From: Macrostomum lignano
Taxonomy: Eukaryota
Direction of reading: 5' to 3'
NCBI GenBank assembly: GCA_002269645.1
Contig: NIVC01000298.1
Coordinates: 124,001-188,000, forward strand
Length of the DNA stretch: 64,000 bases
The notes beneath the pieces were generated by a model. It was not told the origin of the DNA. It was given only the letters and a program-made list of their open reading frames with translations, and did no database searches. Every line of letters starts with the position of its first letter. The stretch's first letter is position 1. Of the stretch, positions 39,727 through 63,599 are shown one piece after another. The position numbers were made by a program, and so were the translations under genes.

Positions 39727-39771
<45 letters not shown>

Positions 39772-39800: not shown

Positions 39801-39837
<37 letters not shown>

Positions 39838-39866
39838 CTAAGAAGACAGACAGACAGACACTAAGA

Positions 39867-39951
<85 letters not shown>

Positions 39952-39980
39952 CTAAGAAGACAGACAGACAGACACTAAGA

Positions 39981-40021
<41 letters not shown>

Positions 40022-40050
40022 CTAAGAAGACAGACAGACAGACAATAAGA

Positions 40051-40083
<33 letters not shown>

Positions 40084-40112
40084 CTAAGAAGACAGACAGA
40101 CAGACAATAAGA

Positions 40113-40149
<37 letters not shown>

Positions 40150-40155
40150 CTAAGA

Positions 40156-40243
<88 letters not shown>

Positions 40244-40265
40244 GGAAAGACAGACAGACAGACAC
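39553..40265. repeat. Compound (CAGA)n microsatellite with cactaagaa/caataagaa interruptions
   Basis: Seen directly; ends about 40 bp before the acceptor of member 4. Confidence 0.97.
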
Positions 40266-40317: not shown

Positions 40318-40950
40318 ATGCATCTGGCGCTTTCAACAACATTGGCGCTGGTGTCGCCCATGCTGGCGGCTCCCCTGCCTGCCTGCCCCCCTGGCCAGTA
40401 TCGGGACAGCGAGGGAGCCAGCAATTGCAAGGACTGCCCAAGTTTATCGAAGTGCCGCGGCGACTTTGGCAGAGCCTGGGCAGCCAGGTGCGACAGGCCG
40501 TTGATTAAGTCCGCTTGCTCAGATTATTGGTCGTCAGGTAGCAGCTCCGACATCAGTGATGTTGCTGTGAGCAGTAATTCTGGCTCTGCAGAAGCGGGCG
40601 AGTCTCTGCAAAGCATGAATGCCATCACTCGAGCTGCTGGGACGGCTTCCAACAGTAGCGCCAAACTAGCTGGCGATGCCTCTGATATGACTACGGGTGT
40701 CGCATGTGATTGCAACTGTGAAAATGTTCTGCCATATCAGATTGCCATCGCCATCCTTGCCATCATCGGGCCAGGGTTTTTATTGCACAAACTTTATAAA
40801 TATGTTCGCAATTGAATAAAGAACAGACAGAAATCTACGGCGAATAATGAAAATGGCAATTATGACGACGAGAATGGACTGCTTATGCAGGAGCGGCAGT
40901 CACCAAATTCTGCTAAAAGTGGTGGCACTCGAAGTGGTAAACGAAACAAA
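40318..40950 (+). CDS. TNFR-like receptor, member 4 (alpha N-domain + stalk B then A + TM type 2); TGA at 40813-40815 truncates the tail
   Basis: [41 protein letters not shown]...; the frame after TGA stays homologous to the member 12 tail up to donor AAA|gtaag at 40951. Confidence 0.78.
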
Positions 40951-41952
40951 GTAAGTGAAAAAAAATTCTTGATTAAAGCTGCCCTGAATGTCTTCTATAC
41001 ATGTAGTTGAAAACGTTTCTTCGCTAAAATTCTCAAGTTTTAAGGTATGCTAGCGAATCATTTATCCAAGTGTGGGATCTCCTTGTATGATTAATCTCTG
41101 CATGTGGGGTCTCTGTAGAGTGTGATTCTTAGGGTGTGGTATCTCCCTTTTTCAAGCTGTGAAAGTCTTTCTCCAGCACAGCATTGCGCACAAAAAAATT
41201 TTTTTTCAGCGTCGGAACTCGTAAAACGAATTAAAATAAAAAACCTTTTTTCAGCGTCGGAACTCGTAAAACGAATTAAAATAAAAAAACCGTTGAAGTT
41301 TGGATTGGATCGGCCAGCTGGTTGATCACCGATTCTACTTGACTCTGACAGTGACTATTTTTAATTGTGCTATAACTTTTTTTTAGTTATGTAACGTTCT
41401 GGCTTAGGCGCATTAGCGCTTGTATCAGCAGAGTCAGCGGAATGGGTAGAATTTCGCATTGCTTGATAATTGCATAACAATTTATCCATCCGTGCTGAGT
41501 TGTTACGTATATATTGGTAGCCAACTCATATTTTATTAGTTTGCGAATTCAATATTTTTTAGATTCTCCTTCCTGTCTTTCTGAAGCTTAAGAGCTCTGC
41601 CATTTTTGTGATATAATATTCAATACAGTACTATAGATTGGTTTCTTCAGTAGTATAACTCTGCGTATCTGGAATTTTATCTTTCTCAAATTTTGCAGAG
41701 TTATCTGCGATGCACACACAGCATGCTGTTTCAGAATTTTTAACTAATAATGGCAGAAAAACTATAATGCCAAAATTCTACCTACGCCTTTTATTTATTT
41801 TATTCTTTACATTCTCAAAGCAAATATGTCTTTGACAAGTCGTAATCGTTAAAACAAAACTTCTCTCTGATCGTTTTTATTAGTTATTGATTTTCTTTAG
41901 AAGAAAAATACCGCGTCTCATTTGGGGCATGCTGTGGTTAATACAGGCAACA

Positions 41953-42760
<808 letters not shown>

Positions 42761-43169
42761 TTCTTACTGACCTTCACCAAAGCTCATTCAATCGTTTATT
42801 CATATTTTTGTCTTACTTTAGTACTTTTAAAGTCTATCGATTAACTACTTGCTATATCCAGCTGAAGTTAGACAGTTGTCCTTCTTACCAACAGTTTGAT
42901 ACACATAATTACTCATTTTAACCTGTTTTTCAATCCGTGCGTTTGTGTGCCTTTGTTTTAAATAACTAAGCTTTCCAACTCGATAAAGTCCGATTTGTTT
43001 TTGTTTTATTGCTTAGAAATATAGCACATGATTTAGCAATAATAAAAACGTTTGATGGAGTGGATTGCTAATCTATTCCCTTTGATACAAAGCAGAATAG
43101 AATGGATTGCTAATCTATTCAATTCTACATATAATTTCAGTGACTTCACCAATCTTGCTACAGATCAAG

Positions 43170-45807: not shown

Positions 45808-46872
45808 ATGAAAGCAGGTTTGCTTTCTCTGGCTGTGATTGTACCGTTGTGGTTTTCCATCAACCCAGAGGCCAGAACCATGGGCGATTGGCCTCCAAAA
45901 TGTGAGCCAGGCAGATACCCTGACATGAGCACCCATGACTGCAAACTGTGTCCTACTCTTGACCGGTGCCGCAGCAATCCCACAGTGAGGCACGAGTGCA
46001 GGCGGACCTTTGTCCGCAAATACTGCAAGTTCACCTTGGATGAGCTGCAGCCGCGGATGGCTGGAACCATCGAGGCCTCTGTTGAACCAGCTGAAGCCGC
46101 TGCTAATAAACCTATTGGTAGTACTGCGAAACCATCTGGTAGTATTGATAAATCTGCTAGTACTGCCGATAAATCTGCTGAGACTGCCGATAAATTTGCT
46201 GGAACTGCCGATAAATCTGCTGGTACTGCCGATAAATCTGCTGGAACTGCCGATAAATCTGCTGGCACTGCCGATAAATCTGCTGGTACTGCCGATAAAT
46301 CTGCTGGTACTGCCGATAAATCTGCTGGAACTGCCGATAAATCTGCTGGCACTGCCGATAAATCTGCTGGTACTGCCGATAAATCTGCTGGTACTGCCGA
46401 TAAATCTGCTGGTACTGCCGATAAATCTGCTGGTACTGCCGATAAATCTGCTGGCACTGCCGATAAATCTGCCATTCCGCTCTACGCAAAGATACTGATT
46501 GGTTTGATGGTACCAATAGTGATCCTTCTCACTGCCATCCTGATTGCTATCCTAGTCTTCTACTATCAATGGTGGAAGAACAATAAACAGAAGCAGAAAT
46601 TTCAACAGAAGCTGAAACAGGCTTCAAGTCTGTCTACCAACAGCCTGCAGCGCTCCTCTGGCAACCGTAAGAGAACTCCATCTTCCACTAGTGAGTTGCC
46701 GAAGAATGAGCTAGACAACTTGATGCCGTCTGATGATAATCAAAGGAATGGCGGTGATGAGTCATCTAACATGCTGTCATCTAATGATCTTCAAAGGAAT
46801 GGCGGCGATGAGTCATCTAACATAAAGTTACAACTGGATTCTGATGAAATCATGTTAAGTACCGAAGTGTAG
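45808..46872 (+). CDS. TNFR-like receptor, member 6 (gamma N-domain, ~15 x 7-aa TADKSAG stalk, TM, ~100-aa tail ending STEV)
   Basis: Signal peptide; WPPKCEPGRYPDMSTHDCKLCP..C...C...C; 21-bp VNTR in frame; TM ILIGLMVPIVILLTAILIAILVFYY; basic KNNKQK after the TM. Confidence 0.87.
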   Translation: MKAGLLSLAVIVPLWFSINPEARTMGDWPPKCEPGRYPDMSTHDCKLCPTLDRCRSNPTVRHECRRTFVRKYCKFTLDELQPRMAGTIEASVEPAEAAANKPIGSTAKPSGSIDKSASTADKSAETADKFAGTADKSAGTADKSAGTADKSAGTADKSAGTADKSAGTADKSAGTADKSAGTADKSAGTADKSAGTADKSAGTADKSAGTADKSAGTADKSAIPLYAKILIGLMVPIVILLTAILIAILVFYYQWWKNNKQKQKFQQKLKQASSLSTNSLQRSSGNRKRTPSSTSELPKNELDNLMPSDDNQRNGGDESSNMLSSNDLQRNGGDESSNIKLQLDSDEIMLSTEV

Positions 46873-48537: not shown

Positions 48538-49425
48538 ATGAAGGCAATTTTGCTTTCTCTAGCTATGATTGTACTGTTATGGTTGTCCGTCAACCCAGAA
48601 GCCAGAACCATGGGTAATTGGCCTCCAAAGTGTCAGCCAGGCGAATACCCTGACATGAGCACCCATGACTGCAAGCGCTGTCCTAGCCTTGACCGGTGTC
48701 GCAGCAATCCCACTGTAGGACATGAGTGCAGACGGAGCCATGTTCGTGAATACTGCAAGTTCACCTTGGATGAGCTGCAGCCGCGGATGGCTGGCACCAG
48801 CGACGCCTCTGTTGAACCAACTAAAGAGGCTGCTATCCAATCCACGACAGAAATGCCTGGTTCTACTGATAGACCGGCTGGTTCTACTGATAGACCGGCT
48901 AGTTCTACTAATAGACCGGCTGGTTCTGCTGGTAGACCGGTTGGTTCTGCTGGTAGACCGGTTGGTTCTGCTGGTAGACCGGTTGGTTCTGCTGGTAGAC
49001 CGGTTGGTTCTGCTGGTAGACCGGTTGGTTCTGCTGGTAGACCGGTTGGTTGTACTGATAAGCCTGCTGGTTTTTCCTTTCCGGTCTACGAAAAGATAAA
49101 AATTGGTTTGGGCGTACTAATAATGATCCTTCTGATGCTCATCCTAATTTCTTTCCTCGCCTTCTTCTACAAATGGTCAAAGAACAATAAACAAAAGCAG
49201 AAGTTTCAACAGCAACTGAAACAGGCTTCAAATCTGTCTACCAAAAGACTACAGCGTTCCGCTGGAAACCGTAAGAGAACTCCATCCTCAAATAGTGAGT
49301 TGCCAAGCCATGAGCTAGAAAATTTGATGCCGTCTGATGATAATCAAACGAATGTCGGCTATGAGTCATCTAAGATTAAAGAACAACCGTATTCTAAGGA
49401 AGACATCCTGACAACTGCGTTGTAA
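48538..49425 (+). CDS. TNFR-like receptor, member 7 (gamma N-domain, ~10 x 7-aa STDRPAG/SAGRPVG stalk, tail ending TTAL); likely start MKAILLSLAM
   Basis: Close paralogue of member 6; the track ORF's extension from 48331 corresponds to non-coding sequence upstream of member 6. Confidence 0.87.
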   Translation: MKAILLSLAMIVLLWLSVNPEARTMGNWPPKCQPGEYPDMSTHDCKRCPSLDRCRSNPTVGHECRRSHVREYCKFTLDELQPRMAGTSDASVEPTKEAAIQSTTEMPGSTDRPAGSTDRPASSTNRPAGSAGRPVGSAGRPVGSAGRPVGSAGRPVGSAGRPVGSAGRPVGCTDKPAGFSFPVYEKIKIGLGVLIMILLMLILISFLAFFYKWSKNNKQKQKFQQQLKQASNLSTKRLQRSAGNRKRTPSSNSELPSHELENLMPSDDNQTNVGYESSKIKEQPYSKEDILTTAL

Positions 49426-50113
49426 CTGTAAATTTATTGAATAAGACCCCCGTCGAGGGCTAGAACTTGTTGACTGGTTCAATAACTTTGCAACCATGAG
49501 AAACCTATTGTGGTACCAACAGCATGGCTTGGACCTTAAATCAGAATTATTTTCTGGCGTCCCAATACAATTTTTTTAACAATCTTTTTGAAATAACAAC
49601 TTTTATACACTTATAGATTTGGTAGGTGGATATTTTTTGTTCTAATCTGTTTTTACCGGTTTAATAAAATAGAATTTTTGCAATACAATTCGCCACGCTT
49701 GCTAAAACAATCTTTTTAACAAAAAAAAATTTTTTTAATATTGTCTAAATATTTTACTTCAAAATCTCCACTTGTACCAAAATCGAAGGCTGTTAATCAT
49801 ATTTATTCCAAAATTCTAAAGTACACGTACTTGTCATTTTATTTTTTGGAATCACGTTTTATTGTGTCTTTAATGTTTTTCTCTGTGCAAAAAATCTTAT
49901 AGAATAGCTTAGTCGATTAGTTATTTGACTAGTTATTGCAACAATTGAGTTTTAAAATTTAGAAATTGGGTAATGAGTTTTAATCGAATTGTGTTCCTAT
50001 TTTATATAGTGTTATTATTAAGTTAACCACTTTAAAGATTAAATAAACTTCCTAGATAGGTACGTTTTCTGTGATAATGAACAAATATATCTATCAGGGT
50101 GCGCGAAGAAGGG

Positions 50114-50789
<676 letters not shown>

Positions 50790-50819
50790 TGAAACAAGAC
50801 AGATTTCATCAAATTTCAG

Positions 50820-51395
50820 ATGGTAAAGGCAATTCAGTTGCTCGCTATATTTATTCTGGTGCTGCCCATGCCGGCAGATCCCCTGCCTGCCTGTCCGCCT
50901 GGCAAATATCGCCACCCTGGAGCCAACGATTGCAGGCTCTGTCCGAGCCTTTCACTGTGCCGCTCTGACGAAGCCTGGGCAGCCAGGTGCGAGTGGCAGT
51001 CGATTAAGTCGGCTTGCTCGCAATTTTGGGGAAATAATCAGCCGCCTAATCCCGCTGAGAATGCGCCAGGTAACGGCTCTGACACCAGTGGCGTTGCTGT
51101 GAGCAATAGTTCTAGCGACTTCAGTGCTACTACTAAACCATCAAATGAAGGTGCGGCTGGCAAAGTAGATCCTTGGATTTTAGGTGTAATTTAATTCTTT
51201 TGCTCTATCGTTATTGCCGTCCTATCGTGCGTTATTGCCAAAATGCGCAGAAATTCTGGCACTGCAGATGAATCCGGTACAGAGAACCAAAGCAAATTTA
51301 TTGAAGGCGAAAATTCTGTAGGCCAGCTCCTGACCGGTGACAAGCAGACTGGTTCCACAGATGCCGAAGATGCCGCTGTCTTTATTGACAAATAA
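50820..51395 (+). CDS. TNFR-like gene, member 8 (alpha N-domain + stalk B); in-frame TAA at 51192-51194 before the TM gives a predicted soluble 124-aa product
   Basis: tttcag|ATG; [20 protein letters not shown]; after TAA the same frame continues [22 protein letters not shown]...AAVFIDK*. Confidence 0.78.
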
Positions 51396-52129
51396 TCTTA
51401 ATCCAACTAGCTTGATTGTGACAGCCAAACGGCTTATTAATTTAACCTATATTCGTTATTTTAGCTTGTGCTTGTTAATATATTTTATAATTGTTTTTTA
51501 GCAATTAGGGATTTTATGCTTGCAATTTTCCGATATTATTACTGTTAGTAATATGGCAATGTTAATTATTATTGTTTTGCTTGCCCCGAATTTACATATA
51601 CGTATTTCCTTTCATTTTTACTATAAGTAGTGCAGTTAGTTACTATCAGTTTAGGATTTTCTCTGCTTGTATTTTTTATATTTGCTACTTACAATATGGG
51701 AGAATAAAAATTTGGATTTTTTGTCATTATTTCCTGTGAGTGTGTGATCTGGACTTTGACACACTGGCGCACATACGTACACATAACTTTTTGTATTATC
51801 AACTGCATTCCCATAACTGGCTTTTGAGCCTATGTCTTCTTACTGCCTCTATTTTTGAGCTCATTCAGTCTTGTATTTATATAGCTTTCAATACCAGATA
51901 TTAACAAATTGGTTTATCCAGCTGAAACTAGACAGAACAGTCTTTCTTACCAAACTGTGTGCTGCACGTATTATACATATTTTTTACTTATTTTGCAATC
52001 TGTGCATTTGCGTGTTTTCGTGCATTTTGTTTTAATAAATAACTAAGCATTCCAGCTCTTGATGAAGTCCAATTTGTTTTTGTTTTATTGATTAGAAACA
52101 TAATAGCTCTTTTATCACATGATTTTAGC

Positions 52130-52416
52130 AATAAGAAGTTGTTTGATAAAGTGGATTGCTAATCTATTCCCTCAGATACAAAACAGAATAGAATGGATTG
52201 CTAATCTATTCCCTCAGATACAAAACAGAATAGAATGGATGGCTAATCTATTCCCTCAGATACAAAACAGAATGGAATGGATTGCTAATCTATTCCCTTT
52301 GATATAAGACAGAATAGAATAGACTGCTAATCTATTCCCTTAGATTCAAAACAGAATGGAATGGATTGCTAATCTATTCCCTTCGATACAAAACAGAATA
52401 GAATGGATTGCTAATG
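52130..52416. repeat. 42-bp tandem repeat (atggattgctaatctattccctcagatacaaaacagaataga), about 7 copies
   Basis: Tandem units seen; the same motif occurs in 1-2 copies upstream of many array members. Confidence 0.92.
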
Positions 52417-53370
52417 GAATGGGCGTGCACCGCGGTTTAGGCTACTGGTTTTACACTAAGGATTTTAAGTGGATGTACTGGTTTGAGATTGGTAGATTCG
52501 CTGCCACCAGGCTTCCTGCTTCCCTAATCCTATTATTTAGTGATAAAGGAATGACTCAGGAAAACGAAAATATTTAACAAAAAGAAAAGGTTATACAAAA
52601 AAATAGAACAGCAATGCAATGGTTATTGTGCACAAGAGTTTTAGGCATTGACTACCTGGTAGTGTACTGTCTTAGGCATTGACTACCGTCAACAGTTTTA
52701 CGTATTTTCCCAATATTTCCCCGCCTCTTACCTATTCTTACTTTGGAGACTTCACGCAAGTCAGTGAACATCTGCTTTTCCAAGCCTAAAAAAAACTAAA
52801 AATAAGTGCTTCCATTGCCTCAGCCATTGAGTAGGCTCTTACGCCACTAGTGATAAATAAAGTTCCAAGTTGGGAGTGTACTAATGTACACTGAAAGCTA
52901 AATTAGACTAAAGAGGACTGTACATCGAGCAAATGACAAATCAAAACCTACCCGGGGGACAGTGAGGGTTCGACGAACCAGTCAGGAAGCCCGTGCCCAA
53001 AAACCTGGTTAGTAAGCCCCTGTATATTAGGGTTGGTCCGAAGACCGAGAGCCGTGGCTATCAGGCTGGGGCCGACCACCCACCACCCCCGGGTACTCTT
53101 GCCAAAACAGTCTCTTATCTTTGAAGCGGCAGGAGGGCTAATCGCCGGGACTGTTTCACCCTTTGCTTCTCCAACCCGCCATTTCTATTAGGGACCGTGC
53201 CAACGGTCTCGTCCTGGTCAGACTCAGTCCTGGTTCTGGCACACTCCAGCTTTAATAGGGTCGCTGGCTGTTCGCTCAGAGGGCACTCCGAGGGGGACCG
53301 TCAGAGCACCAACTGGAATAGGTATAGGCCTGCCTTCCTATACAGCTACCCACAGCCTGTGGGTTCTGTA
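52417..53370. mobile_element. ~950-bp insertion interrupting the 42-bp repeat; unidentified interspersed repeat with a GC-rich distal half
   Basis: The repeat resumes at about 53375; the insert is absent from paralogous positions; no ORF. Confidence 0.45.
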
Positions 53371-53503
53371 CCTTAGATATAGAACAGAATAGAATGGATT
53401 GCTAATCTATTCCCTTAGACACAAAACAGAATAGAATGGATTGCTAATCTTTTCCTTACTATTTTTAATTTCAATTACTCAACCAATCATGCTACAGTTC
53501 CAG

Positions 53504-54235
53504 ATGTCAGCCCTAACAGTTATCCAGTCATTTATAGTGTTGACAGCAGTGCTTTGTCTCACCGCTGTGCTGCCGTTAATCAGCTGCCCAATGGGCACTT
53601 ATTTCAATAAGGGCTCTACAAACAACTGTGATAAGTGCCCAAATTGGCAGCAGTGCAACTCAGAAAATAAATTTTGGCGCGCGCAGTGCAAGCAGGAGAT
53701 TATTAGAGCTGGCTGTCAGGAATTTTGGAACCAGTCTCGAGATGCTGAGATGGCTTCATTGTCTCATAATTCCAACAGTAGCGTCAGGCAGGCTGGCAAT
53801 GCATCTCATGTGAACATCACCTGTAACTGCAAGTGCCCATCAGTGACTGAAGCGCCTAATCCCGCTAAGAATGCGCCACTTAACGGCTCCGACATCAGTG
53901 GTGTTGCTGCAAGCAATAAGTCTAGCCGTGGAGTATTTCTGCAGCCCAACGCCACCACTGAAGGATCAAAGAATGGTGCGGCTGGCAAAGTAGATCCTTG
54001 GCCAATCGTCTGGGTTTTAGGGGTATTTTCATTCGTTTGCTTAATCGTTATTGTCGTCCTATCGTGTGTTATTTACAAACTGCGCAGAAATTCTCAACCT
54101 GCAATTGAATCCAGTGCAGACAAGCACCGCAAATTTACTACAGGCGAAAGTTGTGTATTCCACTTGCTGACCAGACAGCAGACAGCTGGCCCCACAGATG
54201 CCGATGGTGCTGACAAAGAATCTCCATCCAAATAA
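53504..54235 (+). CDS. TNFR-like receptor, member 9 (beta N-domain + A + shortened B + TM/tail 1); likely start MSALTVIQ
   Basis: ttccag|ATG at 53504; signal peptide; CPMGTYFNKG..CDKCP..QQC..FWRAQC.QEII..GCQEFW; TM PWPIVWVLGVFSFVCLIVIVVLSCVIY. Confidence 0.87.
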   Translation: MSALTVIQSFIVLTAVLCLTAVLPLISCPMGTYFNKGSTNNCDKCPNWQQCNSENKFWRAQCKQEIIRAGCQEFWNQSRDAEMASLSHNSNSSVRQAGNASHVNITCNCKCPSVTEAPNPAKNAPLNGSDISGVAASNKSSRGVFLQPNATTEGSKNGAAGKVDPWPIVWVLGVFSFVCLIVIVVLSCVIYKLRRNSQPAIESSADKHRKFTTGESCVFHLLTRQQTAGPTDADGADKESPSK

Positions 54236-55756
54236 CTTTAATTCTGAAAGCCAAACAGCCAAACTATTTATTAATTTAACCTAATATTTTTATTTTAACT
54301 ATTGCTTCTTAATATATTTATAATAGTTTTTAGCAATTATAGATTCGGTGCTTACAAGTTTGCTTGCCCCGAATTTACAATAAGCTTATTTCCTTTCATT
54401 TTTACTATGAGTAGTGCAGTTAGTCATGTCAGTTATGATTTCCCCTGCTTAAAGTTTTCTGATATAATAATTACTACTGTTAGTAAAGGAGAATTTTAAA
54501 ATGTGGAATTTGTCATCATTTGCTCCGGATTTTCTGATGTCTGACTACTATATAGCATTGTTATTTTTATGATTGCTTTTTGATACACACATATTTGGAA
54601 CTAGCTAACAAAAATGTGCACATTGAAATTTGTAGCTCGTTTTTTAAAATGCATTCCCATAACTGGCATTTTAGTCTATGGCTTCTTACTGACGCTATTT
54701 TCAAAAGTCGTTGAATCTTTTATTTATATTTTTGTGTGCTGCTTTAGTAGCTTTCAATACTGTAATAGATAAACTATTTGTTATATCCAGCTGAAGTTAG
54801 ACAGTTGTCTTTCTTACCAACAGTTTACTACACAATATTACTCATTTTAACCTGCTTTGCAATCCGTACGTTTGTGTGCCTTTGTTTTAAATAACGAAGC
54901 TTTACAACTCTTGATAAAATCCGACTTGTTTTTGTTTTATTAATTAGAAATATAGCTCTTTTATCACATGATTTTAGCAATAAGAAATTGCTTGATAGAG
55001 TGGATTGCTAATCTACGAGCTATACCCTCAGATACTTTCAATTATATTTTTATTCTAAAACTATAAAGAAGTTGTCGTACCCTGAAATTCACTAGTACAT
55101 CTAGTTATTTTTAATTAGTACGGTATATAACCTTTGTGTGCTATTATTGTTTCTTCTGCATAAAATAAATGATATAAAGTAGCATATTTAGTGAATAAGT
55201 AATACATTTTAATCAAAATTCTTACTAACAATTACCTACGATATTATTATTAAAGTTGAGCACTTCAAAGATTAAATAACTACGTTTTCTGTGTGCAACT
55301 GCCTTATGATGTCATTCCCATTTTTCGACATAACTGACACCAACGACTGTTTGTTTACTGTTTTACAATTGATAGTGTTTTGAATAATTCATACTCTGAA
55401 AACAAGTATTGCAAAAAAATTATACTTATCAATAATGAACAAATATATCTATCCAGTCCTGCATGAACAGCAACCATATTTTTCATTTACTATCATTCGT
55501 GATGTGTTTATTTATTCAATTCGACTGACCTTCAAATTTTAAATCAACTATATAGGAATGTGGGAAATCTTTAGTGCGAGCTACTCTACCAGAATTATAT
55601 TTTGACATTAGTGCAGGAAGCTGAAGATAATTCTTAGCGGGCGTGGAAAAATGACAGACAGACAGACAGACAAACAGACACGGACGGACAGGCAGACACA
55701 GGAAGCAAGCATTGATAACATTCTCCATACAATTTCAGATATACGAGTAAAACGCC

Positions 55757-55933
55757 ATGCGGTTGGCAATATTAGTCACACTGGCGCTGGTGCTGCCGAG
55801 GCTGGCAGGTCCACTGCCTGCCTGTCCGCCTGGCCACTACCGCGACAAAGAGGGCGCTATGGATTGCAAGAATTGCCCCAGTCCAGCGCAGTGCCAATGC
55901 CAGCACAATTGTAAGCATGTACACTGTCGATAG
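55757..55933 (+). pseudogene. Member 10: duplicate of truncated member 3
   Basis: Same 58-aa frame with one visible R-to-K change (DREG to DKEG). Confidence 0.75.
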
Positions 55934-55997
55934 ATACTGCGACTTAGATAAATAAGACAACCTCTGTCTCAGTCGCAGTTGGAGTGTTTGAAACGCA

Positions 55998-56591
55998 ATG
56001 GAGCCAATCGAAGGGGAAAGAATCGGCTCAGTAGTCTATACGCACGGCGTCTGCATTTATCGGAAAGATAGAGTTAGAAATGGGACAGTCAGCTATCGCT
56101 GCACTAACAAGAACTGTCCGGGACGCGCCGTCGAGAAGGATGGTGTGCTGAGACTCATCGCGCACAACCACGACGGTGATTCAAAGGAGAAGGAAATACT
56201 TCGGCTATGAGCCAATTTGAAGCGGAAGGCCGGTGAGAGCAGTTCATCCCTTCGTGATCTGTTTGACCGAGAGACACAGGCCAGCTCCGTCGGCAATCGG
56301 ATCGGATTTGCTGAAGTGGAGTCGTCGATGTATCGACAAAGAAGACGCCTGCTGCCACCTCTTCGAAAAGCAGCTGTCGACGCGTATGCAGCAATATGCG
56401 ATGCTCCAGACCGCTTCAGGTGCGTCAACAGTGTCATCATTATTCAGGGTCGTGTATCATCTGCTGATGACGGCCATGGACTCATCTTTGCTCACCCTGA
56501 CATGCTGAGTCGTCTGAGTCAGGCTACATGCTGGCACATGGATGGCACATTCAGAACCGTGCCAAATATCTTCTGGTCGAAAGGATTTTAA
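55998..56591 (+). pseudogene. MULE transposase fragment, copy 2
   Basis: Same as 36886-37458 but with CGA-to-TGA at 56208-56210; retains CWHMDGTFRTVP, the first catalytic Asp region. Confidence 0.82.
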
Positions 56592-57123
56592 TTCGATTTA
56601 ATTCTTACAAATGCAATCGACTACTTTGTGACAGACGATGGAGCAACTTGACTGCTTTTATTTATTGCATTGCGCGCTTGTGCCAAACTTTGACTGCGCG
56701 CTTATGCCAGTGCGGTCTTGTGATGGTGCGCGCTTATGCCAATGCTGAGCACTTTCTACCGCGCTCTTGTGCAAGTCAAAACGTGCGCGCTTATGCCTCT
56801 GCGCGCCTGTGCCAGACTTTGACATAAAATACACAGGCGCGCTTGTGCCGGTGCGCGCCTGTGCCAGACTTTGACATAAAATACACAGGCGCGCTTGTGC
56901 CGGTGCGCGCTTATGATGGCGACCCGCCGCGGCGACTCTTGCAAAGCCTGGGAAGCCAGGTGTGATAGGGCTTCCATTAAGTCTGCTTGCGCAGATTTTT
57001 GGAAAATGAAGTTTCGACTCAAAAAATGATGGAGCTGCATTGATAAAAAATGTATTTCTTGGACGATCGCTGGCGTTTTATTCCTGTTTGTTATGTTTAA
57101 AAACATTTAAACATCAAGACCGC

Positions 57124-58114
57124 TAATGGTCATTCTAAAAGTTTGTGCAATCAAGTTTTAACAAATTTCAGTAAAATCGCCCAGACAGACTATATAATGT
57201 AAAAGAATTGAAGTGCTCGTGCGAGCCCAACTTGAAATTGCAAAATGCAGATTGGCTGTCCCGTAGCTCCGCTGAGCCCTGCACCAGACCTGTGGTGCTG
57301 AGGTGGAACAGGGGTGCGGAGATGAGGTTAGTTGTCTGCTACTTGTTCACCATGTGCCTGGATAGCCTGACTGTCAACTAACACTGCTACAGGTGCTTCA
57401 TCATCCAGCATCTTCGCCCTGCACTGCTCAAAAAGCGCCAAAAGATCCTTGACGATGGCATTCTCCTTCTGCACAACAATGCCAGCCCCCTCACCAGCAA
57501 GATTGTGCAGGAGTTGCAATTAATTAGGTCCTACCCAAGGAGGCAGGCAAAAGCTGCCCCACCCACCGTACTCACCTGACATGATCGTCCCTGTGACTAC
57601 GACCTTTTTCCGAAGATGTATACTCAGCAACATCGAAAAGTCGCCATCACAGAAGATTCCGTCTGTGGTCGCCACTTTTGAGAGTGCAGGTAAAGTCTCT
57701 CAATCTTTGCGAGTGACGCAACTCCAGCTACGCCACGGCAGACTTGAGTTGAGGAATGAGTGGAGGAGCGGTGTGCGAGGGTTGGATGGATTTAAGCTAC
57801 CCCGATCAGGTTTCTCGTATCTTTTATTTCAGAATAGTCCAAGAGAAACTGCTCACTGGAGCACATAGAGTGGCGACTTTTCAATGTTGCTGAGTATAGA
57901 ATCGTCCTCGTTTTGACTGCTTAGACAAGCTGATTGCAGAGATAGTCCGTCTATTGAAACAACTTGGTGACTTTAGGGGCTATTAACGGAATTTAGAAGC
58001 TTCCAGACCAATGGCAAAGTGTCATTGCATCCAGTGAATACTTTTAAAACACTGTAACTTTTCATTCACTTGTTTGCGCATAAATTCGATTGCACGAACC
58101 TTTGAAATGGCTCT
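57124..58114 (+). mobile_element. Internally deleted mariner element, copy 2
   Basis: Duplicate of 37952-38906 with matching TIR remnants. Confidence 0.72.
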
Positions 58115-58656
58115 GAGACCAATATACAGCAATGAACTGTATGATTTTTTATATAAGTAATTAACAATTTACAACAACAATTGAGAGTTTATATTGTCCC
58201 CTTGCCAACAGTAGTATTTAATATATTTGATAATCACAGTATACAAAATCCCTAAGATCTTCATTACTAACTGCAATACGTAGAGTAGACATTTTGGACA
58301 TTTTGTTTTGATACATTTTTATCGTATATTTTCCTACTTATTTATGTGCTTTAGTACTCGTATTTTTACTAGCTATTTTTAGATTCCAAGTAAACCCGCT
58401 GTGTGAATATGTGCGAACTTAAATTGCCTCTTCTTTTAGTTATATTATTAACATCGTACTTTTACTCCTTCGTAAATTGTAAGTAAAACAGGTTTTATTC
58501 TATTGGATAAATGCTATTTGAAACTTTTATTCTTTTTTTATTCTGATTTATTGCTTACAAAGATAGTTTCATCTGCTGATTGTAGAAAATGACAAACAAA
58601 ATCACAGACAACCAAATTCATTCCCTTAGATACAAATCAGAACAGAATGGATTGCT

Positions 58657-58722
<66 letters not shown>

Positions 58723-58873
58723 AACACAGACAGACAAACAGAAACACAAACAGAAACACAGACAGACACACAGACAGACAGACAAACAGAAACACAGACA
58801 GACACACAGACAGACAGACAGACAAACAGAAACACAGACAGACACACAGACAGACAGACAGACAAACAGAAAC

Positions 58874-58962
<89 letters not shown>

Positions 58963-59157
58963 AACACAGACAGACACACAGACAGACAGACAAACAGAAA
59001 CACAGACAGACACACAGACAGACAGACAGACAAACAGAAACACAGACAGACACACAGACAGACAGACAGACAAACAGAAACACAGACAGACACACAGACA
59101 GACAGACAAACAGAAACACAGACAGACACACAGACAGACAGACAGACAAACAGAAAC

Positions 59158-59202
<45 letters not shown>

Positions 59203-59281
59203 AACACAGACAGACACACAGACAGACAGACAAACAGAAACACAGACAGACACACAGACAGACAGACAGACAAACAGAAAC

Positions 59282-59318
<37 letters not shown>

Positions 59319-59321
59319 AAC

Positions 59322-59358
<37 letters not shown>

Positions 59359-59361
59359 AAC

Positions 59362-59398
<37 letters not shown>

Positions 59399-59477
59399 AA
59401 CACAGACAGACACACAGACAGACAGACAAACAGAAACACAGACAGACACACAGACAGACAGACAGACAAACAGAAAC

Positions 59478-59514
<37 letters not shown>

Positions 59515-59557
59515 AACACAGACAGACACACAGACAGACAGACAGACAAACAGAAAC

Positions 59558-59594
<37 letters not shown>

Positions 59595-59597
59595 AAC

Positions 59598-59638
<41 letters not shown>

Positions 59639-59713
59639 AACACAGACAGACACACAGACAGACAGACAGACAAACAGAAACACAGACAGACAGACAGACA
59701 GACAAACAGAAAC

Positions 59714-59758
<45 letters not shown>

Positions 59759-59801
59759 AACACAGACAGACACACAGACAGACAGACAGACAAACAGAAA
59801 C

Positions 59802-59838
<37 letters not shown>

Positions 59839-59881
59839 AACACAGACAGACACACAGACAGACAGACAGACAAACAGAAAA

Positions 59882-59918
<37 letters not shown>

Positions 59919-59957
59919 AACACAGACAGACACACAGACAGACAGACAAACAGAAAC

Positions 59958-59994
<37 letters not shown>

Positions 59995-60037
59995 AACACA
60001 GACAGACACACAGACAGACAGACAGACAAACAGAAAC

Positions 60038-60074
<37 letters not shown>

Positions 60075-60117
60075 AACACAGACAGACACACAGACAGACA
60101 GACAGACAAACAGAAAC

Positions 60118-60154
<37 letters not shown>

Positions 60155-60193
60155 AACACAGACAGACACACAGACAGACAGACAAACAGAAAC

Positions 60194-60234
<41 letters not shown>

Positions 60235-60237
60235 AAC

Positions 60238-60272
<35 letters not shown>

Positions 60273-60321
60273 CACAGACAGACAGACAGACACACAGACA
60301 GACAGACAGACAAACAGAAAC

Positions 60322-60354
<33 letters not shown>

Positions 60355-60417
60355 AACACAGACAGACAGATAGACAGACAGACAGACACACAGACAGACA
60401 GACAGACAAACAGAAAC

Positions 60418-60454
<37 letters not shown>

Positions 60455-60457
60455 AAC

Positions 60458-60494
<37 letters not shown>

Positions 60495-60557
60495 AACACA
60501 GACAGACACACAGACAGACAGACAGACACACAGACAGACAGACAGACAAACAGAAAC

Positions 60558-60588
<31 letters not shown>

Positions 60589-60713
60589 CACAGACAGACA
60601 GACAGACACACAGACAGACAGACAGACAAACAGAAACACAGACAGACAGACAGACAGACACACAGACAGACAGACAGACAGACACACAGACAGACAGACA
60701 GACAAACAGAAAC

Positions 60714-60750
<37 letters not shown>

Positions 60751-60873
60751 AACACAGACAGACACACAGACAGACAGACAGACAAACAGAAACACAGACA
60801 GACACACAGACAGACAGACAGACAAACAGAAACACAGACAGACACACAGACAGACAGACAGACAAACAGAAAC

Positions 60874-60918
<45 letters not shown>

Positions 60919-61026
60919 AACACAGACAGACACACAGACAGACAGACAGACAAACAGAAACACAGACAGACACACAGACAGACAGACAGACAAACAGAAA
61001 CACAGACAGACACACAGACAGACACA
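58657..61026. repeat. ~2.4-kb compound CAGA microsatellite
   Basis: Seen directly; source of the 594-810 aa artefact ORFs. Confidence 0.97.
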
Positions 61027-61065
61027 TGAAACAAGCATTCATATACATATTTCATCAAATTTCAG

Positions 61066-61587
61066 ATGGTAAAGGCAATTCAGTTGCTCGCTATATTTAT
61101 TCTGGTGCTGCCCATGCCGGCAGATCCCCTGCCTGCCTGTCCGCCTGGCAAATATCGCCACCCTGGAGCCAACGATTGCAGGCTCTGTCCGAGCCTTTCA
61201 CAGTGCCGCTCTGACGAAGCCTGGGCAGCCAGGTGCGAGTGGCAGTCGATTAAGTCGGCTTGCTCGCAATTTTGGGGAAATAATCAGCCGCCTAATCCCG
61301 CTGAGAATGCGCCAGGTAACGGCTCTGACACCAGTGGCGTTGCTGTGAGCAATAGTTCTAGCGACTTCAGTGCTACTACTAAACCATCAAATGAAGGTGC
61401 GGCTGGCAAAGTAGATCCTTGGCCAATTGTCTGGATTTTAGGTGTACTTTTATTGGTCTGCTTGATCGTTATTGTCGTGGTACCCTGTGTTATTAGAGGC
61501 GAAAACTCTGTATGCCAGCTGCTGACGGATGACAACCCGACTGGACCCACAGATGCCGAAGATGCTGTCTATAATGATGGGGATTAA
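61066..61587 (+). CDS. TNFR-like receptor, member 11 (ectodomain near-identical to member 8, intact TM, internally deleted tail)
   Basis: tttcag|ATG; one aa difference from member 8 in the ectodomain (SLSQC versus SLSLC); TM PIVWILGVLLLVCLIVIVVVPCVI. Confidence 0.85.
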   Translation: MVKAIQLLAIFILVLPMPADPLPACPPGKYRHPGANDCRLCPSLSQCRSDEAWAARCEWQSIKSACSQFWGNNQPPNPAENAPGNGSDTSGVAVSNSSSDFSATTKPSNEGAAGKVDPWPIVWILGVLLLVCLIVIVVVPCVIRGENSVCQLLTDDNPTGPTDAEDAVYNDGD

Positions 61588-62471
61588 TCTCCATCTAACT
61601 GACTTTGACTGCGACTGCCAAGCATTTTATCAATTGCTTATTATTCATGCAACTTAATACTCATTATTTAACTTGTGTATCCTAGTATATATTTATAATT
61701 GTTTTTTTGCAATTATGGATTCCATGCTTGCAATTTTCCGCTAGTTTCACTACTAGTATTATGGCTATTTTAGTTATTATTATTGCTTGAAATTTTCTGA
61801 TCTTTTTGTCACTGCTAGTAAAGGAAAATTTTTTAATTGTAGAATTTCTGTCATTATTTTTCACGGATGTTCTTATGCGTGACTACTATATAGCATTGTT
61901 GTTTCTCTGATTGTTTTTGACTCATTGGAACCAACAGATTCGTACACATAATGCATTCCATAAGGCATTTTTGCGTCTTATTGGCACTATTTTTGCGCTC
62001 ATTTAATCTTATATTTATATATTTGTATTTTTTAGTAGCTTTCAATACCAAGGACAACTTAAGTATTGTCCCCTTGCAATACAAATATATATATATTACC
62101 AGTAAGTAGTCCTTGTTTCAATATTGCTTGCACATCCACAATTTGTTATCCAGCTAAAGCTAGACAGCTGTCTTTCCTACAAAACTGTGGGCTACACATA
62201 ATTACTCATTTTAGCCTTTTTTGCAATTGTGCGTTTGTTTTAAATAACTAAGCTTTACAACTCTTGATAAATTCCGACTTGTATTTGATTTTATGATTAG
62301 AAAGATTTATCACAATTTTGCTTTTATCACAATATTTAGCGATAATAAAAAAACGTTTTGATAAAGTGGATTGTTAATCTATGCCCTTAGACACTAAGCA
62401 GAATAGAATGGATTGCTAATCTATACCCTCATAATTTTCAGTTACTTTTACCAATCATGCAAAAATTTCAG

Positions 62472-63599
62472 ATGTCGTCGATAAAAATTATCCAGTCATT
62501 TATAGTGTTGACAGGAGTGCCGTGTCTCACCGCCGCGCTGCCGTCAATCAGCTGCCCAATGGGCACCTATCATAACAAAGAGGCGACCGGTAAATGCGAT
62601 AAATGCCCAACCTGGCAGCAGTGCATCGGCACAGATAAAGTTTGGCGAGCTCAATGTGAGCAAGAGATTATTAAATCTGGCTGTCAGGAATACTGGGAGC
62701 AAACTCGAGATGCTGAGACAACTTTATCGTCTTATAATTTCAACAGTAGCGCCAAGCTGGCTGGCAATGGCTCTGATATGAACACAAGTGCTACCTATGA
62801 TTGTAACTGCGAACATGTTCTGTCATGTCAGATTGGCATAGCCATTCTTGCGCCGCTTGCCCTCATCGGGTTATTTGTTTCATTGCATAAAATTTATGAA
62901 TATGTTTGCAATACCGGTAGAATGAAGAACGAACCGAAAGCTACGTGTACGCCAAATATGGAAAATGGCAATCGTGACGACACAAAAGGGCTGGTCATGC
63001 AGGAGCTGCCGTCAGCAAATTCTGGTGAAAGTGGCGGCGCTCGACGTCGTAAAAAGAACAAGGTACGTAGATATTTGTTTGTTATATAAAGCCGTCTAGA
63101 TTAGTCTTCTATAGTTTAATTTACCATTCTCAGGTTGGAAGGTATGCTAGAGATTCATTCTCCGGGGTGGGATCTCCTTGTAGGATTAATCTCAGGGTGT
63201 GGCATCTCCTTGTAGGATTAATCTCAGGGTGTGGCATCTCCTTGTAGGATTAATCTCAGGGTGTGGGATCACCTTGTAGGATTAAACTCCGGGTGTGGGA
63301 TCTCCTTTTATGGTTAACCTTAGGCCGTGTGGGATTTCCTTGTAGGATTAATCTCAGGGTCCTGGATCTCTGGAGAGTGTGATTCTCAGGCAGTGGGATC
63401 TCTGCAAAGTTTGATTCTCAGGGTGTGGGACCTCTGGAGAGTGTGATTCTCAAGGTTTGGGATCTCTGCAATGTGGGGGTCTGCACTTCTCTGGGTTCTG
63501 TCAGGCTGTCCTATGTCAAGCTGTCAAAAGTCTCACTGCAGCTCAGCATTTCCCACTCACCCTGGAAATTTTTTTCAGCGTCCTTGGAAAACGACTTGA
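62472..63599 (+). CDS. TNFR-like receptor, member 12 (beta N-domain + stalk A + TM/tail type 2); exon 62472-63062, possible short last exon 63579-63599
   Basis: tttcag|ATG; MSSIKIIQSFIVLTGVPCLTAALPSISCPMGTYHNK; TM IGIAILAPLALIGLFVSL; phase-0 donor AAG|gtacgt; candidate exon RPWKTT* after ttttttcag. Confidence 0.8.
63165..63470. repeat. ~30-bp repeat (gggtgtgg(g/c)atctccttgtaggattaatctca), related to the gtgggatctc minisatellites; a shorter copy lies at about 41070-41150
   Basis: Tandem units seen in the presumed intron after member 12. Confidence 0.8.

What the first reader, a model, noticed from the sequence alone, without database searches (positions are those of the whole stretch)
50820..61587. 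Paired soluble and membrane forms of the same ectodomain (m8 versus m11): possible decoy pair
The m8 and m11 ectodomains differ by one residue. m8 has lost 12 nt (PIVW, between tgg repeats) and has TAA (probably from TTA) at the start of the TM, giving a secreted 124-aa protein; its downstream frame is still open to 51395. m11 keeps the TM but has an in-frame deletion of the basic juxtamembrane segment. Soluble TNFR decoys (OPG, DcR3) are established; whether m8 is a decoy or a young pseudogene is unknown.
Basis: partly seen in the sequence, partly recalled or inferred. Interest (0 to 1): 0.7.

Follow-up and report, generated by a model that had tools for sequence, protein, structure and literature searches.

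The report
Freshly truncated copy in flatworm receptor-like cluster
Two neighbouring flatworm (Macrostomum lignano) genes do encode the same outer domain, one with and one without a membrane anchor, but the anchorless one is most likely a very young recombinant copy hit by a single stop codon, not an evolved decoy receptor.

Summary
The ectodomains differ by one residue (L46/Q46). m8 lacks 12 nt (PIVW) and has TAA where relatives have TTA. Its frame stays open to 51395, and m11 lacks 66 nt of juxtamembrane coding sequence.

The window is Macrostomum lignano Mlig_3_7, contig NIVC01000298.1. The genes belong to a tandem family seen only in M. lignano. Its members are small type-I membrane proteins with one 6-Cys domain. 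That domain sits at or below threshold for Pfam Ephrin_rec_like and below threshold for TNFR_c6.

m8 is a chimera. From about 50745 to 51189 it matches m11 at 2 differences in 399 sites. After 51189 it differs at 40 of 146 sites and resembles the m9/m5/m1 tail type. The 12-nt deletion and the TAA sit at this junction.

Two other assembled copies of the locus carry one m11-type gene in this slot, with PIVW, TTA and a full TM. They have no m8-type tail, m9 or m10. At least seven copies in the family carry lesions.

Best reading: a recent gene-conversion or unequal-recombination product, newly truncated, probably a pseudogene in the making. A working decoy is not excluded. No expression evidence could be obtained for m8 or m11.

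The parts
50114..50789 (.). GACA-type satellite array directly 5' of m8. The 5' end of the m8/m11 near-identity tract is lost inside it.
   Evidence: TRF periods 40/76/116. Identity to the m11 array is 82-100% per 50-nt bin and the register is ambiguous.
50790..50819 (+). Unique 5' flank of m8 ending in TTTCAG|ATG. It carries an m8-specific 8-9-bp deletion at about 50798 and one substitution at 50802.
   Evidence: m11, the sister-contig gene and m4 all keep the 8-9 bp.
50820..51194 (+). m8 ORF, 124 aa: signal peptide (about aa 1-20), 6-Cys domain (50892-51017), N-glycosylated Ser/Asn-rich stalk, then W-ILGVI and TAA at 51192-51194.
50955..50957 (+). Codon 46, CTG (Leu) in m8 versus CAG (Gln) in m11. 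This is the only ectodomain difference and it is derived in m8.
   Evidence: The position is Q, K, R or H in the other family members examined.
51174..51189 (+). Recombination junction: the site of the 12-nt (PIVW) deletion between TGG repeats, followed by the last bases shared with m11.
   Evidence: Max chi-square breakpoint at 51189. Seven-sequence alignment.
51192..51194 (+). Premature TAA in the fifth codon of the former TM helix.
   Evidence: TTA in m11, m11', m11'', m5 and m1; TCA in m9.
51195..51395 (+). Relic of the m8 TM remainder and an m9/m5/m1-type cytoplasmic tail. It is in frame and open for 66 codons, with the original TAA at 51393-51395.
   Evidence: About 27% divergent from m11 and 73-75% identical to the m1, m5 and m11 tail regions, 68% to the m9 region.
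53504..54235 (+). m9, an intact family member with the other CRD subtype and the long tail. It lies between m8 and m11.
55757..57002 (+). m10, a family copy whose Cys-rich domain is split (55757-55927 and 56796-57002) by an insert carrying a FLYWCH zinc-finger ORF (55998-56210).
58657..61024 (.). 2.4-kb GACA-type satellite array directly 5' of m11.
61066..61587 (+). m11 ORF, 173 aa. Same signal peptide, Cys-rich domain and stalk as m8, a TM at about aa 120-143 (61423-61494), and a 30-aa acidic tail. The 66-nt juxtamembrane segment is missing after about 61494.
62472..63089 (+). m12, the next intact family member. It is fused with m11-like sequence in the UniProt gene model P0001.

Best explanation
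m8 is a young chimeric paralogue in a fast-turnover tandem family that was seen only in M. lignano. Family members are small type-I membrane glycoproteins with a single TNFR-like / Ephrin_rec_like Cys-rich domain.

How it arose. Non-allelic recombination (gene conversion or unequal crossing-over) was probably seeded in or near the GACA satellite that precedes both genes. It pasted m11-type sequence (5' flank, signal peptide, Cys-rich domain, stalk) onto an older gene with an m9/m5/m1-type TM and tail. The 3' junction lies in the first codons of the TM helix.

What happened at the junction. m8 carries a 12-nt deletion between TGG repeats and, five codons later, a one-base change that makes a Leu (or Ser) codon into TAA. 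The stop removes the anchor and tail, so any product would be a secreted protein of about 104 aa.

What it most likely is. A copy that has just been disabled, a pseudogene in the making, rather than a selected decoy.

Shown: the chimeric structure, the junction, the derived state of three of the four m8-specific changes in the tract (the fourth is unpolarised), the absence of the truncated form in two sister copies, and frequent lesions in the family.

Inferred: the direction of transfer (m11 type into m8), and loss of function.
For: Source and family.
- The window is M. lignano Mlig_3_7 contig NIVC01000298.1.
- The only full-length relatives among 1.84 billion representatives are M. lignano proteins.

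Chimera.
- 2/399 differences before 51189 against 40/146 after.
- The downstream part matches the m9/m5 type (GCCGTCCTATCGTG..., AKMRRNS...).
- It is roughly equidistant (68-75% identity) from the m1, m5, m9 and m11 tail regions, so it is an old lineage.

Derived changes. With m11' and m4 as outgroups, the 8-9-bp flank deletion, Q46L, the 12-nt deletion and TTA>TAA are all m8-specific. In the same tract m11 has no clearly derived change.

Not conserved. Contigs NIVC01000297.1 and NIVC01000040.1 each carry, after m7 and the satellite, one m11-type gene with PIVW, TTA and a full TM. Neither has an m8-type tail, m9 or m10.

Recency. The open, homologous frame after the stop means the stop is recent.

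Decay is common.
- m1 has a degenerate domain and no signal peptide.
- m5 has lost its signal peptide.
- m2/m3 and m10 are split by a FLYWCH element.
- m4 has a stop just after the TM.
- m11' and m11'' share a tail frameshift, and m12'' has its TM deleted.

Weak constraint. Family pN/pS is 0.3-1.3.

Annotation. The transcript-based GenBank annotation calls m4-m7 on this contig but not m8 (method in PMC5730564).

Readthrough. TAA followed by T is a poor readthrough context (established knowledge).
Against: - The signal peptide, all six Cys and the stalk of m8 are intact, and the stop sits exactly where it yields a clean soluble ectodomain.
- m8 keeps the same proximal 5' flank as m11 (TTTCAG|ATG), so if m11 is expressed m8 may be too.
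- A second anchorless copy (m12'' in NIVC01000040.1) and two tail-less copies (m4; m11'/m11'') show that C-terminal truncation recurs. This could be a mode of diversification.
- m9, m11 and m12 also lack gene models, so the missing m8 annotation does not discriminate.
- One substitution is far too few for any selection test on m8.
- No reads or RNA data could be examined.
Confidence: 0.6

Rival explanations
1. m8 is a functional secreted antagonist (decoy) of m11. Homogenisation of the ectodomain keeps the two binding specificities matched, and the stop converts the copy into a soluble competitor.
For: - The ectodomain is intact and all but identical to m11.
- The product has no TM.
- The 5' flank is shared with m11.
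- A second anchorless copy, m12'', exists on another contig.
- M. lignano has several TNF-ligand homologues that could in principle be partners (PMC7519573).
- The fold model has a hairpin plus helices, and its weak best matches include single-CRD TNFRs: BCMA, Grindelwald and Fn14.
Against: - The pair is absent from both other assembled copies of the locus.
- The only ectodomain change is a radical, m8-derived Q46L next to a conserved Cys.
- The stop coincides with a recombination junction, which explains its position without selection.
- The frame downstream is still open, so the event is very young.
- There is no expression evidence for either gene.
- TNFR membership is not established.
Confidence: 0.2
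2. The TAA, or the m8/m11 near-identity itself, is an artefact of assembly or polishing, or represents only one of several subgenome copies. The real m8 would then be an ordinary membrane protein.
For: - Mlig_3_7 is a Canu PacBio assembly polished with Pilon using Illumina and RNA-seq reads (PMC5730564).
- Identity between the window's contig and NIVC01000297.1 switches abruptly at the satellite upstream of m8.
- No independent record contains m8's L46 or TAA. The independent gene model P0001 carries Q46 and is joined to m12-type sequence.
Against: - The TAA lies in the part of m8 that is about 27% different from every paralogue, so cross-mapping reads are unlikely to have changed it.
- Substitution errors are rare in polished PacBio consensus (general knowledge).
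- The chimeric junction would need reads spanning two loci that share no long overlap downstream.
Confidence: 0.1
3. Both m8 and m11, and perhaps the whole m8-m12 segment, are unexpressed relics. There is then no functional pair at all.
For: - None of m8, m9, m11 or m12 has a gene model in the transcript-based annotation, while m4-m7 do.
- The m11-type genes on both sister contigs have a frameshifted tail.
- pN/pS between m11 and m11' is 0.73.
Against: - m9, m11 and m12 keep complete ORFs with signal peptide, six Cys and a TM.
- Multi-mapping of reads among near-identical copies can suppress transcript assembly.
- An independent annotation produced a model over m11/m12-type sequence (P0001).
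Confidence: 0.1

Closest known systems
Single-CRD members of the TNF receptor superfamily (BCMA/TNFRSF17, Fn14/TNFRSF12A, Drosophila Grindelwald)
   Same: - Small type-I membrane proteins with one N-terminal Cys-rich domain, a short stalk, one TM and a short tail.
- The N-terminal CxxGxY...CxxC hairpin matches the start of the TNFR_c6 model.
- The AF2 model (hairpin plus three short helices, pLDDT 85) has these proteins among its weak best Foldseek matches, with TM-scores of 0.35-0.53.
   Different: - No match is significant (Foldseek E of 2.7 or more; TNFR_c6 14-17 bits against a cut-off of 29.4).
- The tails have no TRAF-binding motif and Pfam reports no death domain.
- No ligand is known.
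- A survey of flatworm TNFRs recognised a single NGFR-like receptor in all platyhelminths and did not include this family (PMC7519573).
Soluble decoy receptors OPG (TNFRSF11B) and DcR3 (TNFRSF6B)
   Same: The ectodomain has no membrane anchor and is encoded by its own gene, alongside an anchored relative.
   Different: OPG and DcR3 are old, conserved genes with several CRDs and demonstrated ligands (established knowledge). m8 is one nonsense mutation away from a membrane protein. It is absent from two sister copies of the locus and has no evidence of expression or binding.
Pfam Ephrin_rec_like (PF07699, GCC2/GCC3-type Cys-rich repeat)
   Same: This is the best Pfam match of the family: 22.7 bits for m12 and 23.2 bits for m13' (P0008), against a cut-off of 23.1. 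Distant profile hits are multi-repeat Ephrin_rec_like proteins.
   Different: Only the first half of the 48-position model aligns (positions 12-35). The C-terminal half of the flatworm domain is helical and specific to the family. Here the domain is single, not in arrays.
Duplicated pseudogenes and gene-conversion chimeras in tandem receptor clusters (general phenomenon)
   Same: - An abrupt switch from about 99.5% to about 73% identity within one gene.
- Repeat arrays at the tract border.
- Many lesioned copies.
- Copy-number differences between haplotypes or subgenomes.
   Different: Nothing essential. The unusual detail is that the disabling stop falls exactly at the start of the anchor, leaving a complete secretable ectodomain.

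Membership tests
TNF receptor superfamily | At least one Cys-rich domain recognised by the TNFR_c6 / TNFR-Cys models at curated threshold | tested here: not met
   m11 scores 14.1 bits (E 0.066) and m4 scores 17.3 bits, against a cut-off of 29.4. UniRef labels one relative (P0003) 'TNFR-Cys domain-containing'.
TNF receptor superfamily | Fold of the Cys-rich domain superposable on solved TNFR CRDs | tested here: inconclusive
   CRD-only AF2 model has pLDDT 84.8. Foldseek against PDB finds BCMA, Grindelwald, Fn14 and OX40 among the top hits, but at E 3-10, probability 0.15 or less, and TM-scores of 0.35-0.53.
TNF receptor superfamily | Cytoplasmic death domain or TRAF-binding motif | tested here: not met
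   Pfam finds no domain in the tails. There is no [PSAT]x[QE]E, PxQxxD or PxExx[aromatic/acidic] motif in the m11, m8-relic, m9 or m12 tails.
TNF receptor superfamily | Binds a TNF-family ligand | not testable with these tools
   M. lignano has TNF ligand homologues (PMC7519573). No binding data exist.
Ephrin_rec_like (PF07699) | Score at or above the gathering threshold over the whole model | tested here: inconclusive
   m12 scores 22.7 and P0008 scores 23.2, against 23.1. Only model positions 12-35 of 48 align.
Soluble decoy receptor | Signal peptide and ligand-binding ectodomain without TM or GPI signal | tested here: met
   The m8 product has an N-terminal hydrophobic segment only. Its C-terminus, WILGVI, is too short for an anchor.
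Soluble decoy receptor | Maintained as a distinct gene (conserved in related genomes or copies, under purifying selection) | tested here: not met
   Both sister contigs carry an anchored m11-type gene in this slot. m8 has one non-synonymous and no synonymous change against m11.
Soluble decoy receptor | Expressed and secreted; competes for the ligand of the anchored receptor | not testable with these tools
   There is no gene model for m8 or m11 in the GenBank annotation. No transcript or read data were reachable.
Duplicated (non-processed) pseudogene | Disabling lesion relative to intact paralogues, with recognisable remnant coding sequence | tested here: met
   TAA in TM codon 5, followed by 66 in-frame codons that align with paralogue TM and tails.
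Duplicated (non-processed) pseudogene | Neutral evolution or loss of expression | tested here: inconclusive
   There are too few substitutions since the event. Family-wide pN/pS is already 0.3-1.3.
Gene-conversion / unequal-recombination chimera | Statistically supported breakpoint between segments of different ancestry | tested here: met
   Max chi-square 108.7 at 51189, with 0 of 2000 permutations reaching it. The downstream part is of the m9/m5/m1 type.

The most novel reading that the evidence does not exclude
The family repeatedly makes secreted, domain-only variants from anchored paralogues by small C-terminal lesions. m8 would arise by a stop and m12'' on another subgenome by a TM deletion. 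Gene conversion would keep the ectodomain of the soluble copy matched to its anchored partner. This would be decoy birth caught in the act, in a neopolyploid flatworm with several TNF-like ligands.
Probability: 0.12. Interest if true: 0.6.

Novelty: new member of a known kind. Interest (0 to 1): 0.3.

Why it matters
If m8 is only a freshly disabled copy, the locus is a clean textbook example of satellite-flanked non-allelic recombination and birth-and-death turnover in a neopolyploid genome. It is useful for annotators of Mlig_3_7 but not surprising.

The family itself is uncharacterised. It consists of single TNFR-like Cys-rich domain membrane proteins, and in these searches full-length members were found only in M. 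lignano. It was not counted in the published survey of flatworm TNF receptors. Because M. lignano has several TNF-ligand homologues and is transgenesis-capable, testing whether these proteins bind them would be cheap.

If m8 turned out to be expressed and secreted, it would show how a decoy can arise from a receptor by one base change.

Tried and rejected
- Exact-sequence look-ups of m8, m11, m9, m12 and P0001 in the assembly index found nothing. This gave no independent confirmation of the TAA and no expression proxy.
- The protein databases hold no transcriptome-derived M. lignano proteins even for the annotated members, so absence of hits says nothing about expression.
- Foldseek of the full-length and CRD-only models against PDB gave no significant match. 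I do not claim TNFR membership.
- dN/dS on the tails and between contigs lacks power. The values (0.3-1.3) do not separate functional from decaying copies.
- I first read the sister contig NIVC01000297.1 as a simple 97% homeologue showing a deletion of m8-m10. That reading is too simple. m4, m5 and m7 are 99.7-100% identical between the contigs, yet m11' is 5% and m12' about 20% divergent. The relationship therefore changes at the satellite. I use m11' and m11'' only as close outgroups and as evidence that the slot holds an anchored gene.
- The 275-aa 'gene' annotated between m4' and m5' on the sister contig is a translation of the GACA satellite, not a family member.
- A MULE transposase next to the FLYWCH ORF was suspected but Pfam did not confirm it.
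- A GPI-anchor signal in m8 was rejected because the hydrophobic C-terminus is only 6 residues.
- Nuclear stop-codon reassignment was rejected because TAA terminates m8's relic, m11 and other members normally.
- The 12-nt deletion was considered as a disabling lesion and rejected. m5 and m1 have in-frame indels of 6 and 9 nt in the same helix and keep a TM.


Full report
**1. What the window is**

The region has eukaryotic character: long GACA-type satellite arrays, low G+C and transposon relics. Protein searches with m11 and m9 return only Macrostomum lignano entries.

An exact look-up places a window-encoded protein (P0002 = m5) on contig NIVC01000298.1 (206,970 bp) of assembly GCA_002269645.1 (Mlig_3_7). 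Locus L002 corresponds to window positions 33139-53936.

Mlig_3_7 is a Canu PacBio assembly polished with Pilon, and its annotation is transcript-based (PMC5730564). The species is a neopolyploid with three subgenomes (S, L1, L2) in the assembly. SNP divergence between them is about 2% and there are large indel differences (PMC10733133).

**2. The family**

All copies lie on the + strand between about 34 and 63 kb. There are at least twelve copies or fragments of one gene family.

Intact members (m6, m7, m9, m11, m12) have these parts:
- a signal peptide;
- one domain with six invariant Cys (C-x2-G-x-Y...C-x2-C-P...C...C...C);
- a Ser/Asn/Thr-rich stalk with N-glycosylation sequons;
- one TM helix;
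- a short tail.

Domains, stalks and tails are shuffled among members. For example, m4 has an m11-type domain with an m12-type stalk and TM.

Pfam matches are weak. TNFR_c6 scores 14.1 bits for m11 against a cut-off of 29.4. Ephrin_rec_like scores 22.7 bits for m12 and 23.2 for P0008 against 23.1, and covers only half of the model.

A profile of the domain was searched against 1.84 billion representative proteins. It finds five full-length matches, all from M. lignano contigs or records: P0001, P0002, P0005, P0006 and P0008. Every other hit is a multi-repeat Ephrin_rec_like protein that matches only the first 20-40 of the 49 profile positions.

AlphaFold models the domain as a β-hairpin followed by three short helices. 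pLDDT is 70-84 in the full-length model and 84.8 for the domain alone. Foldseek against PDB gives nothing significant. Single-CRD TNF receptors (BCMA, Grindelwald, Fn14) recur among the weak top hits, at E 3-10 and TM-scores of 0.35-0.53.

The tails have no TRAF-type motif and Pfam reports no death domain. A published survey reported a single NGFR-like TNFR in all platyhelminths plus several TNF-ligand homologues in M. lignano. This family was not part of that survey (PMC7519573).

So 'TNFR-like single Cys-rich domain protein' is a fair description. 'TNF receptor' is not established.

**3. The observation**

- m8 (50820-51194) and m11 (61066-61587) differ in the ectodomain at a single base: 50956, CTG Leu46 versus CAG Gln46.
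- m8 lacks 12 nt between TGG repeats (PIVW).
- Codon 125 of m8 is TAA where m11 has TTA.
- The frame then stays open for 66 codons, to 51395.
- m11 lacks 66 nt of juxtamembrane coding sequence that m8's relic, m9, m5 and m1 retain.

Only 2.4% of shuffles of the post-stop stretch stay open, and the translation aligns with paralogue tails. Hydropathy confirms that the 124-aa product has no anchor.

**4.

Identity between the two loci is 2 differences in 399 aligned sites from the unique 5' flank to 51189. It is then 40 in 146 (Fisher 8e-23; 0 of 2000 permutations reach the observed max chi-square).

Upstream, the tract runs into the GACA satellite that precedes both genes, and its border cannot be placed there.

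Downstream of the junction m8 is of the m9/m5/m1 type. It shares ...[14 protein letters not shown]... and the DNA string GCCGTCCTATCGTG. It is about equally distant (68-75% identity) from the m1, m5, m9 and m11 tail regions, so it is an old lineage.

The identical ectodomains are therefore the product of a recent gene conversion or unequal exchange. It overwrote the 5' half of an older gene with m11-type sequence. The 12-nt deletion (51174-51176 region) and the TAA (51192-51194) lie at this junction.

In-frame indels at the same spot occur in m5 (-6 nt) and m1 (-9 nt), and both keep a TM. The 12-nt deletion alone would therefore not remove the anchor. The only solubilising lesion is the single TAA.

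At that codon m11, m5, m1 and two m11-type genes on other contigs have TTA, and m9 has TCA.

**5. Polarity**

I used the m11-type gene of contig NIVC01000297.1 and m4 as outgroups. The 8-9-bp deletion 21 nt upstream of the ATG, Q46L, the 12-nt deletion and the nonsense change are all derived in m8. m11 has no clearly derived change in the tract.

Position 46 is Gln, Lys, Arg or His in the other members examined.

So three of the four differences inside the shared tract, and the nonsense change just past its 3' border, are on the m8 side; the fourth tract difference (50802) cannot be polarised. This is suggestive of relaxed constraint or of mutagenic repair at the exchange. It is not significant.

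**6. Other assembled copies of the locus**

I walked along two further contigs through annotated family proteins.

In NIVC01000297.1 (L001, L003, L004) the order is m1'-m2'/3'-m4'-m5'-m6'-m7'-satellite. One m11-type gene follows (L004 3442-3903). It has PIVW, TTA, a full TM, the 66-nt deletion and m11-type 3' flank. After it come a greatly expanded 42-bp repeat array, an m12-like gene and an m4-like gene (P0008).

In NIVC01000040.1 (L005) the same order is seen: satellite, m11'' (1131-1592), m12'', m13''.

Neither contig has an m8-type tail, an m9 or an m10 within the fetched stretch, about 10 kb past m13' (L004) and m13'' (L005) (tblastn).

Relationships are not simple homeology. m4 is 100% identical over 951 bp between the window and NIVC01000297.1. 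m5 and m7 differ by 1-2 nt. Yet m11' differs from m11 at 23 of 447 sites and m12' at about 20%. The switch happens at the satellite upstream of m8.

Whatever the exact history, two points stand:
- the anchorless configuration is private to the window's contig;
- the m8-m11 region is a hot spot of non-allelic recombination.

**7. Lesions are the rule in this family**

- m1: degenerate domain and no signal peptide.
- m5: signal peptide lost.
- m2/m3 and m10: Cys-rich domain split by an insert with a FLYWCH ORF.
- m4: stop eight residues after the TM, with the m12-type tail still readable downstream.
- m11' and m11'': the same 1-nt deletion frameshifting the tail.
- m12'': TM removed by a deletion with frameshift.

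N-terminal and C-terminal lesions are about equally frequent. Pairwise pN/pS across the family is 0.3-1.3. This is the picture of a birth-and-death family under weak constraint, in which a copy with a fresh nonsense codon is by default a new pseudogene.

**8. Expression**

The GenBank annotation calls m4, m5, m6 and m7 on this contig but nothing at m8. However, m9, m11 and m12 are not in the protein databases either, so this does not discriminate.

The only independent record touching the pair is UniProt model P0001. It comes from another gene set, carries Q46, and is spliced onto m12-type sequence. It supports the m11 sequence, not m8's L46 or TAA.

m8 keeps the TTTCAG|ATG context shared by m9 (TTCCAG), m11 and m12. 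Given widespread SL trans-splicing in this species (PMC5730564), this may be a trans-splice acceptor. That is an inference.

**9. Verdict**

- Observation: confirmed.
- Interpretation: the structural contrast (soluble versus anchored) is real at sequence level. The 'decoy pair' idea gains no support from conservation, selection or expression. The TNFR analogy rests on sub-threshold similarity.
- Most likely (about 0.6): m8 is a very recent recombination chimera that has just lost its anchor through one base change and is on its way to being a pseudogene.
- Functional secreted antagonist: possible (about 0.2).
- Assembly, polishing or single-subgenome allele issue: about 0.1.
- Whole segment silent: about 0.1.

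No step had to be referred. The organism is a free-living laboratory flatworm.

Noticed in passing
window 50114-50789, 58657-61024, about 39000-40260, 41880-42780; L003 8753-9703: GACA-type satellite arrays (0.7-2.4 kb) sit directly 5' of every m4/m8/m11/m13-type gene and mark the borders of the recombination tracts. On the sister contig one such array is annotated as a 275-aa protein-coding gene (a TDRQ repeat translation), which is an annotation artefact.
   Followed up: partly
window 55757-57002 and 36645-37837: Two family copies (m10 and m2/m3) have their Cys-rich domain split by the same insert, which carries a FLYWCH zinc-finger ORF (55998-56210; Pfam 23.9 bits against 23.6). The insertion predates the duplication of the 34.3-40.3 kb block into 53.7-59.4 kb (89-92% identity).
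   Followed up: partly
window 52152-52415, 53371-53455; L004 about 4690-6565; L005 about 2390-3170: A 42-bp tandem repeat (translating as IEWIANLFP...) lies upstream of m9/m12-type genes. It has about 6 copies in the window but about 45 on contig NIVC01000297.1.
   Followed up: partly
window 40318-40815 (m4); L003 7191-7688: m4 ends eight residues after its TM, with the m12-type tail still readable in frame downstream. Its DNA is 100% identical over 951 bp on the sister contig, and it has a gene model. It may be a stable tail-less variant.
   Followed up: partly
L005 3201-3605 (NIVC01000040.1): The m12-type gene on this contig has lost its TM through a deletion with frameshift, giving a 134-aa signal peptide + domain + stalk ORF. 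This is a second, independent anchorless copy in the family.
   Followed up: partly
L004 3442-3903 and L005 1131-1592: The m11-type genes on both other contigs share the same 1-nt deletion, which truncates the tail to RGENSVSSC*. The frameshift is therefore real and inherited, not a random long-read error.
   Followed up: partly
window 50814-50822, 53498-53506, 61060-61068, 62466-62474: The start codons of m8, m9, m11 and m12 are immediately preceded by TTTCAG (TTCCAG for m9), which looks like a splice acceptor, perhaps for spliced-leader trans-splicing. The upstream ATGs of m9 and m12 (MLQFQ-, MQKFQ-) are then probably not the true starts.
   Followed up: no
P0001 (UniRef A0A1I8JGC..., M. lignano): This database gene model joins m11-type sequence (up to ...SGVA, at a GTGAGC donor-like site) to m12-type sequence. 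UniRef names it 'Pacifastin domain-containing protein'. It is probably a mis-joined model across two neighbouring family genes.
   Followed up: partly
window about 50100-50800 versus L004 about 2400-3440: Identity between contigs NIVC01000298.1 and NIVC01000297.1 is 99.7-100% across m4-m7. It falls to about 95% (m11') and about 79% (m12') beyond the satellite upstream of m8. This is either a structural breakpoint between subgenome copies or a scaffold chimera.
   Followed up: partly
window 45808-46872 (m6), 48538-49425 (m7); window 14001-16000: m6 and m7 carry mucin-like stalks made of perfect 7-aa tandem repeats (DKSAGTA, GSAGRPV) whose copy number differs between contigs. Separately, window 14-16 kb has extreme strand skew (GC skew -0.69, AT skew -0.60), presumably another satellite. 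That stretch was not examined.
   Followed up: no
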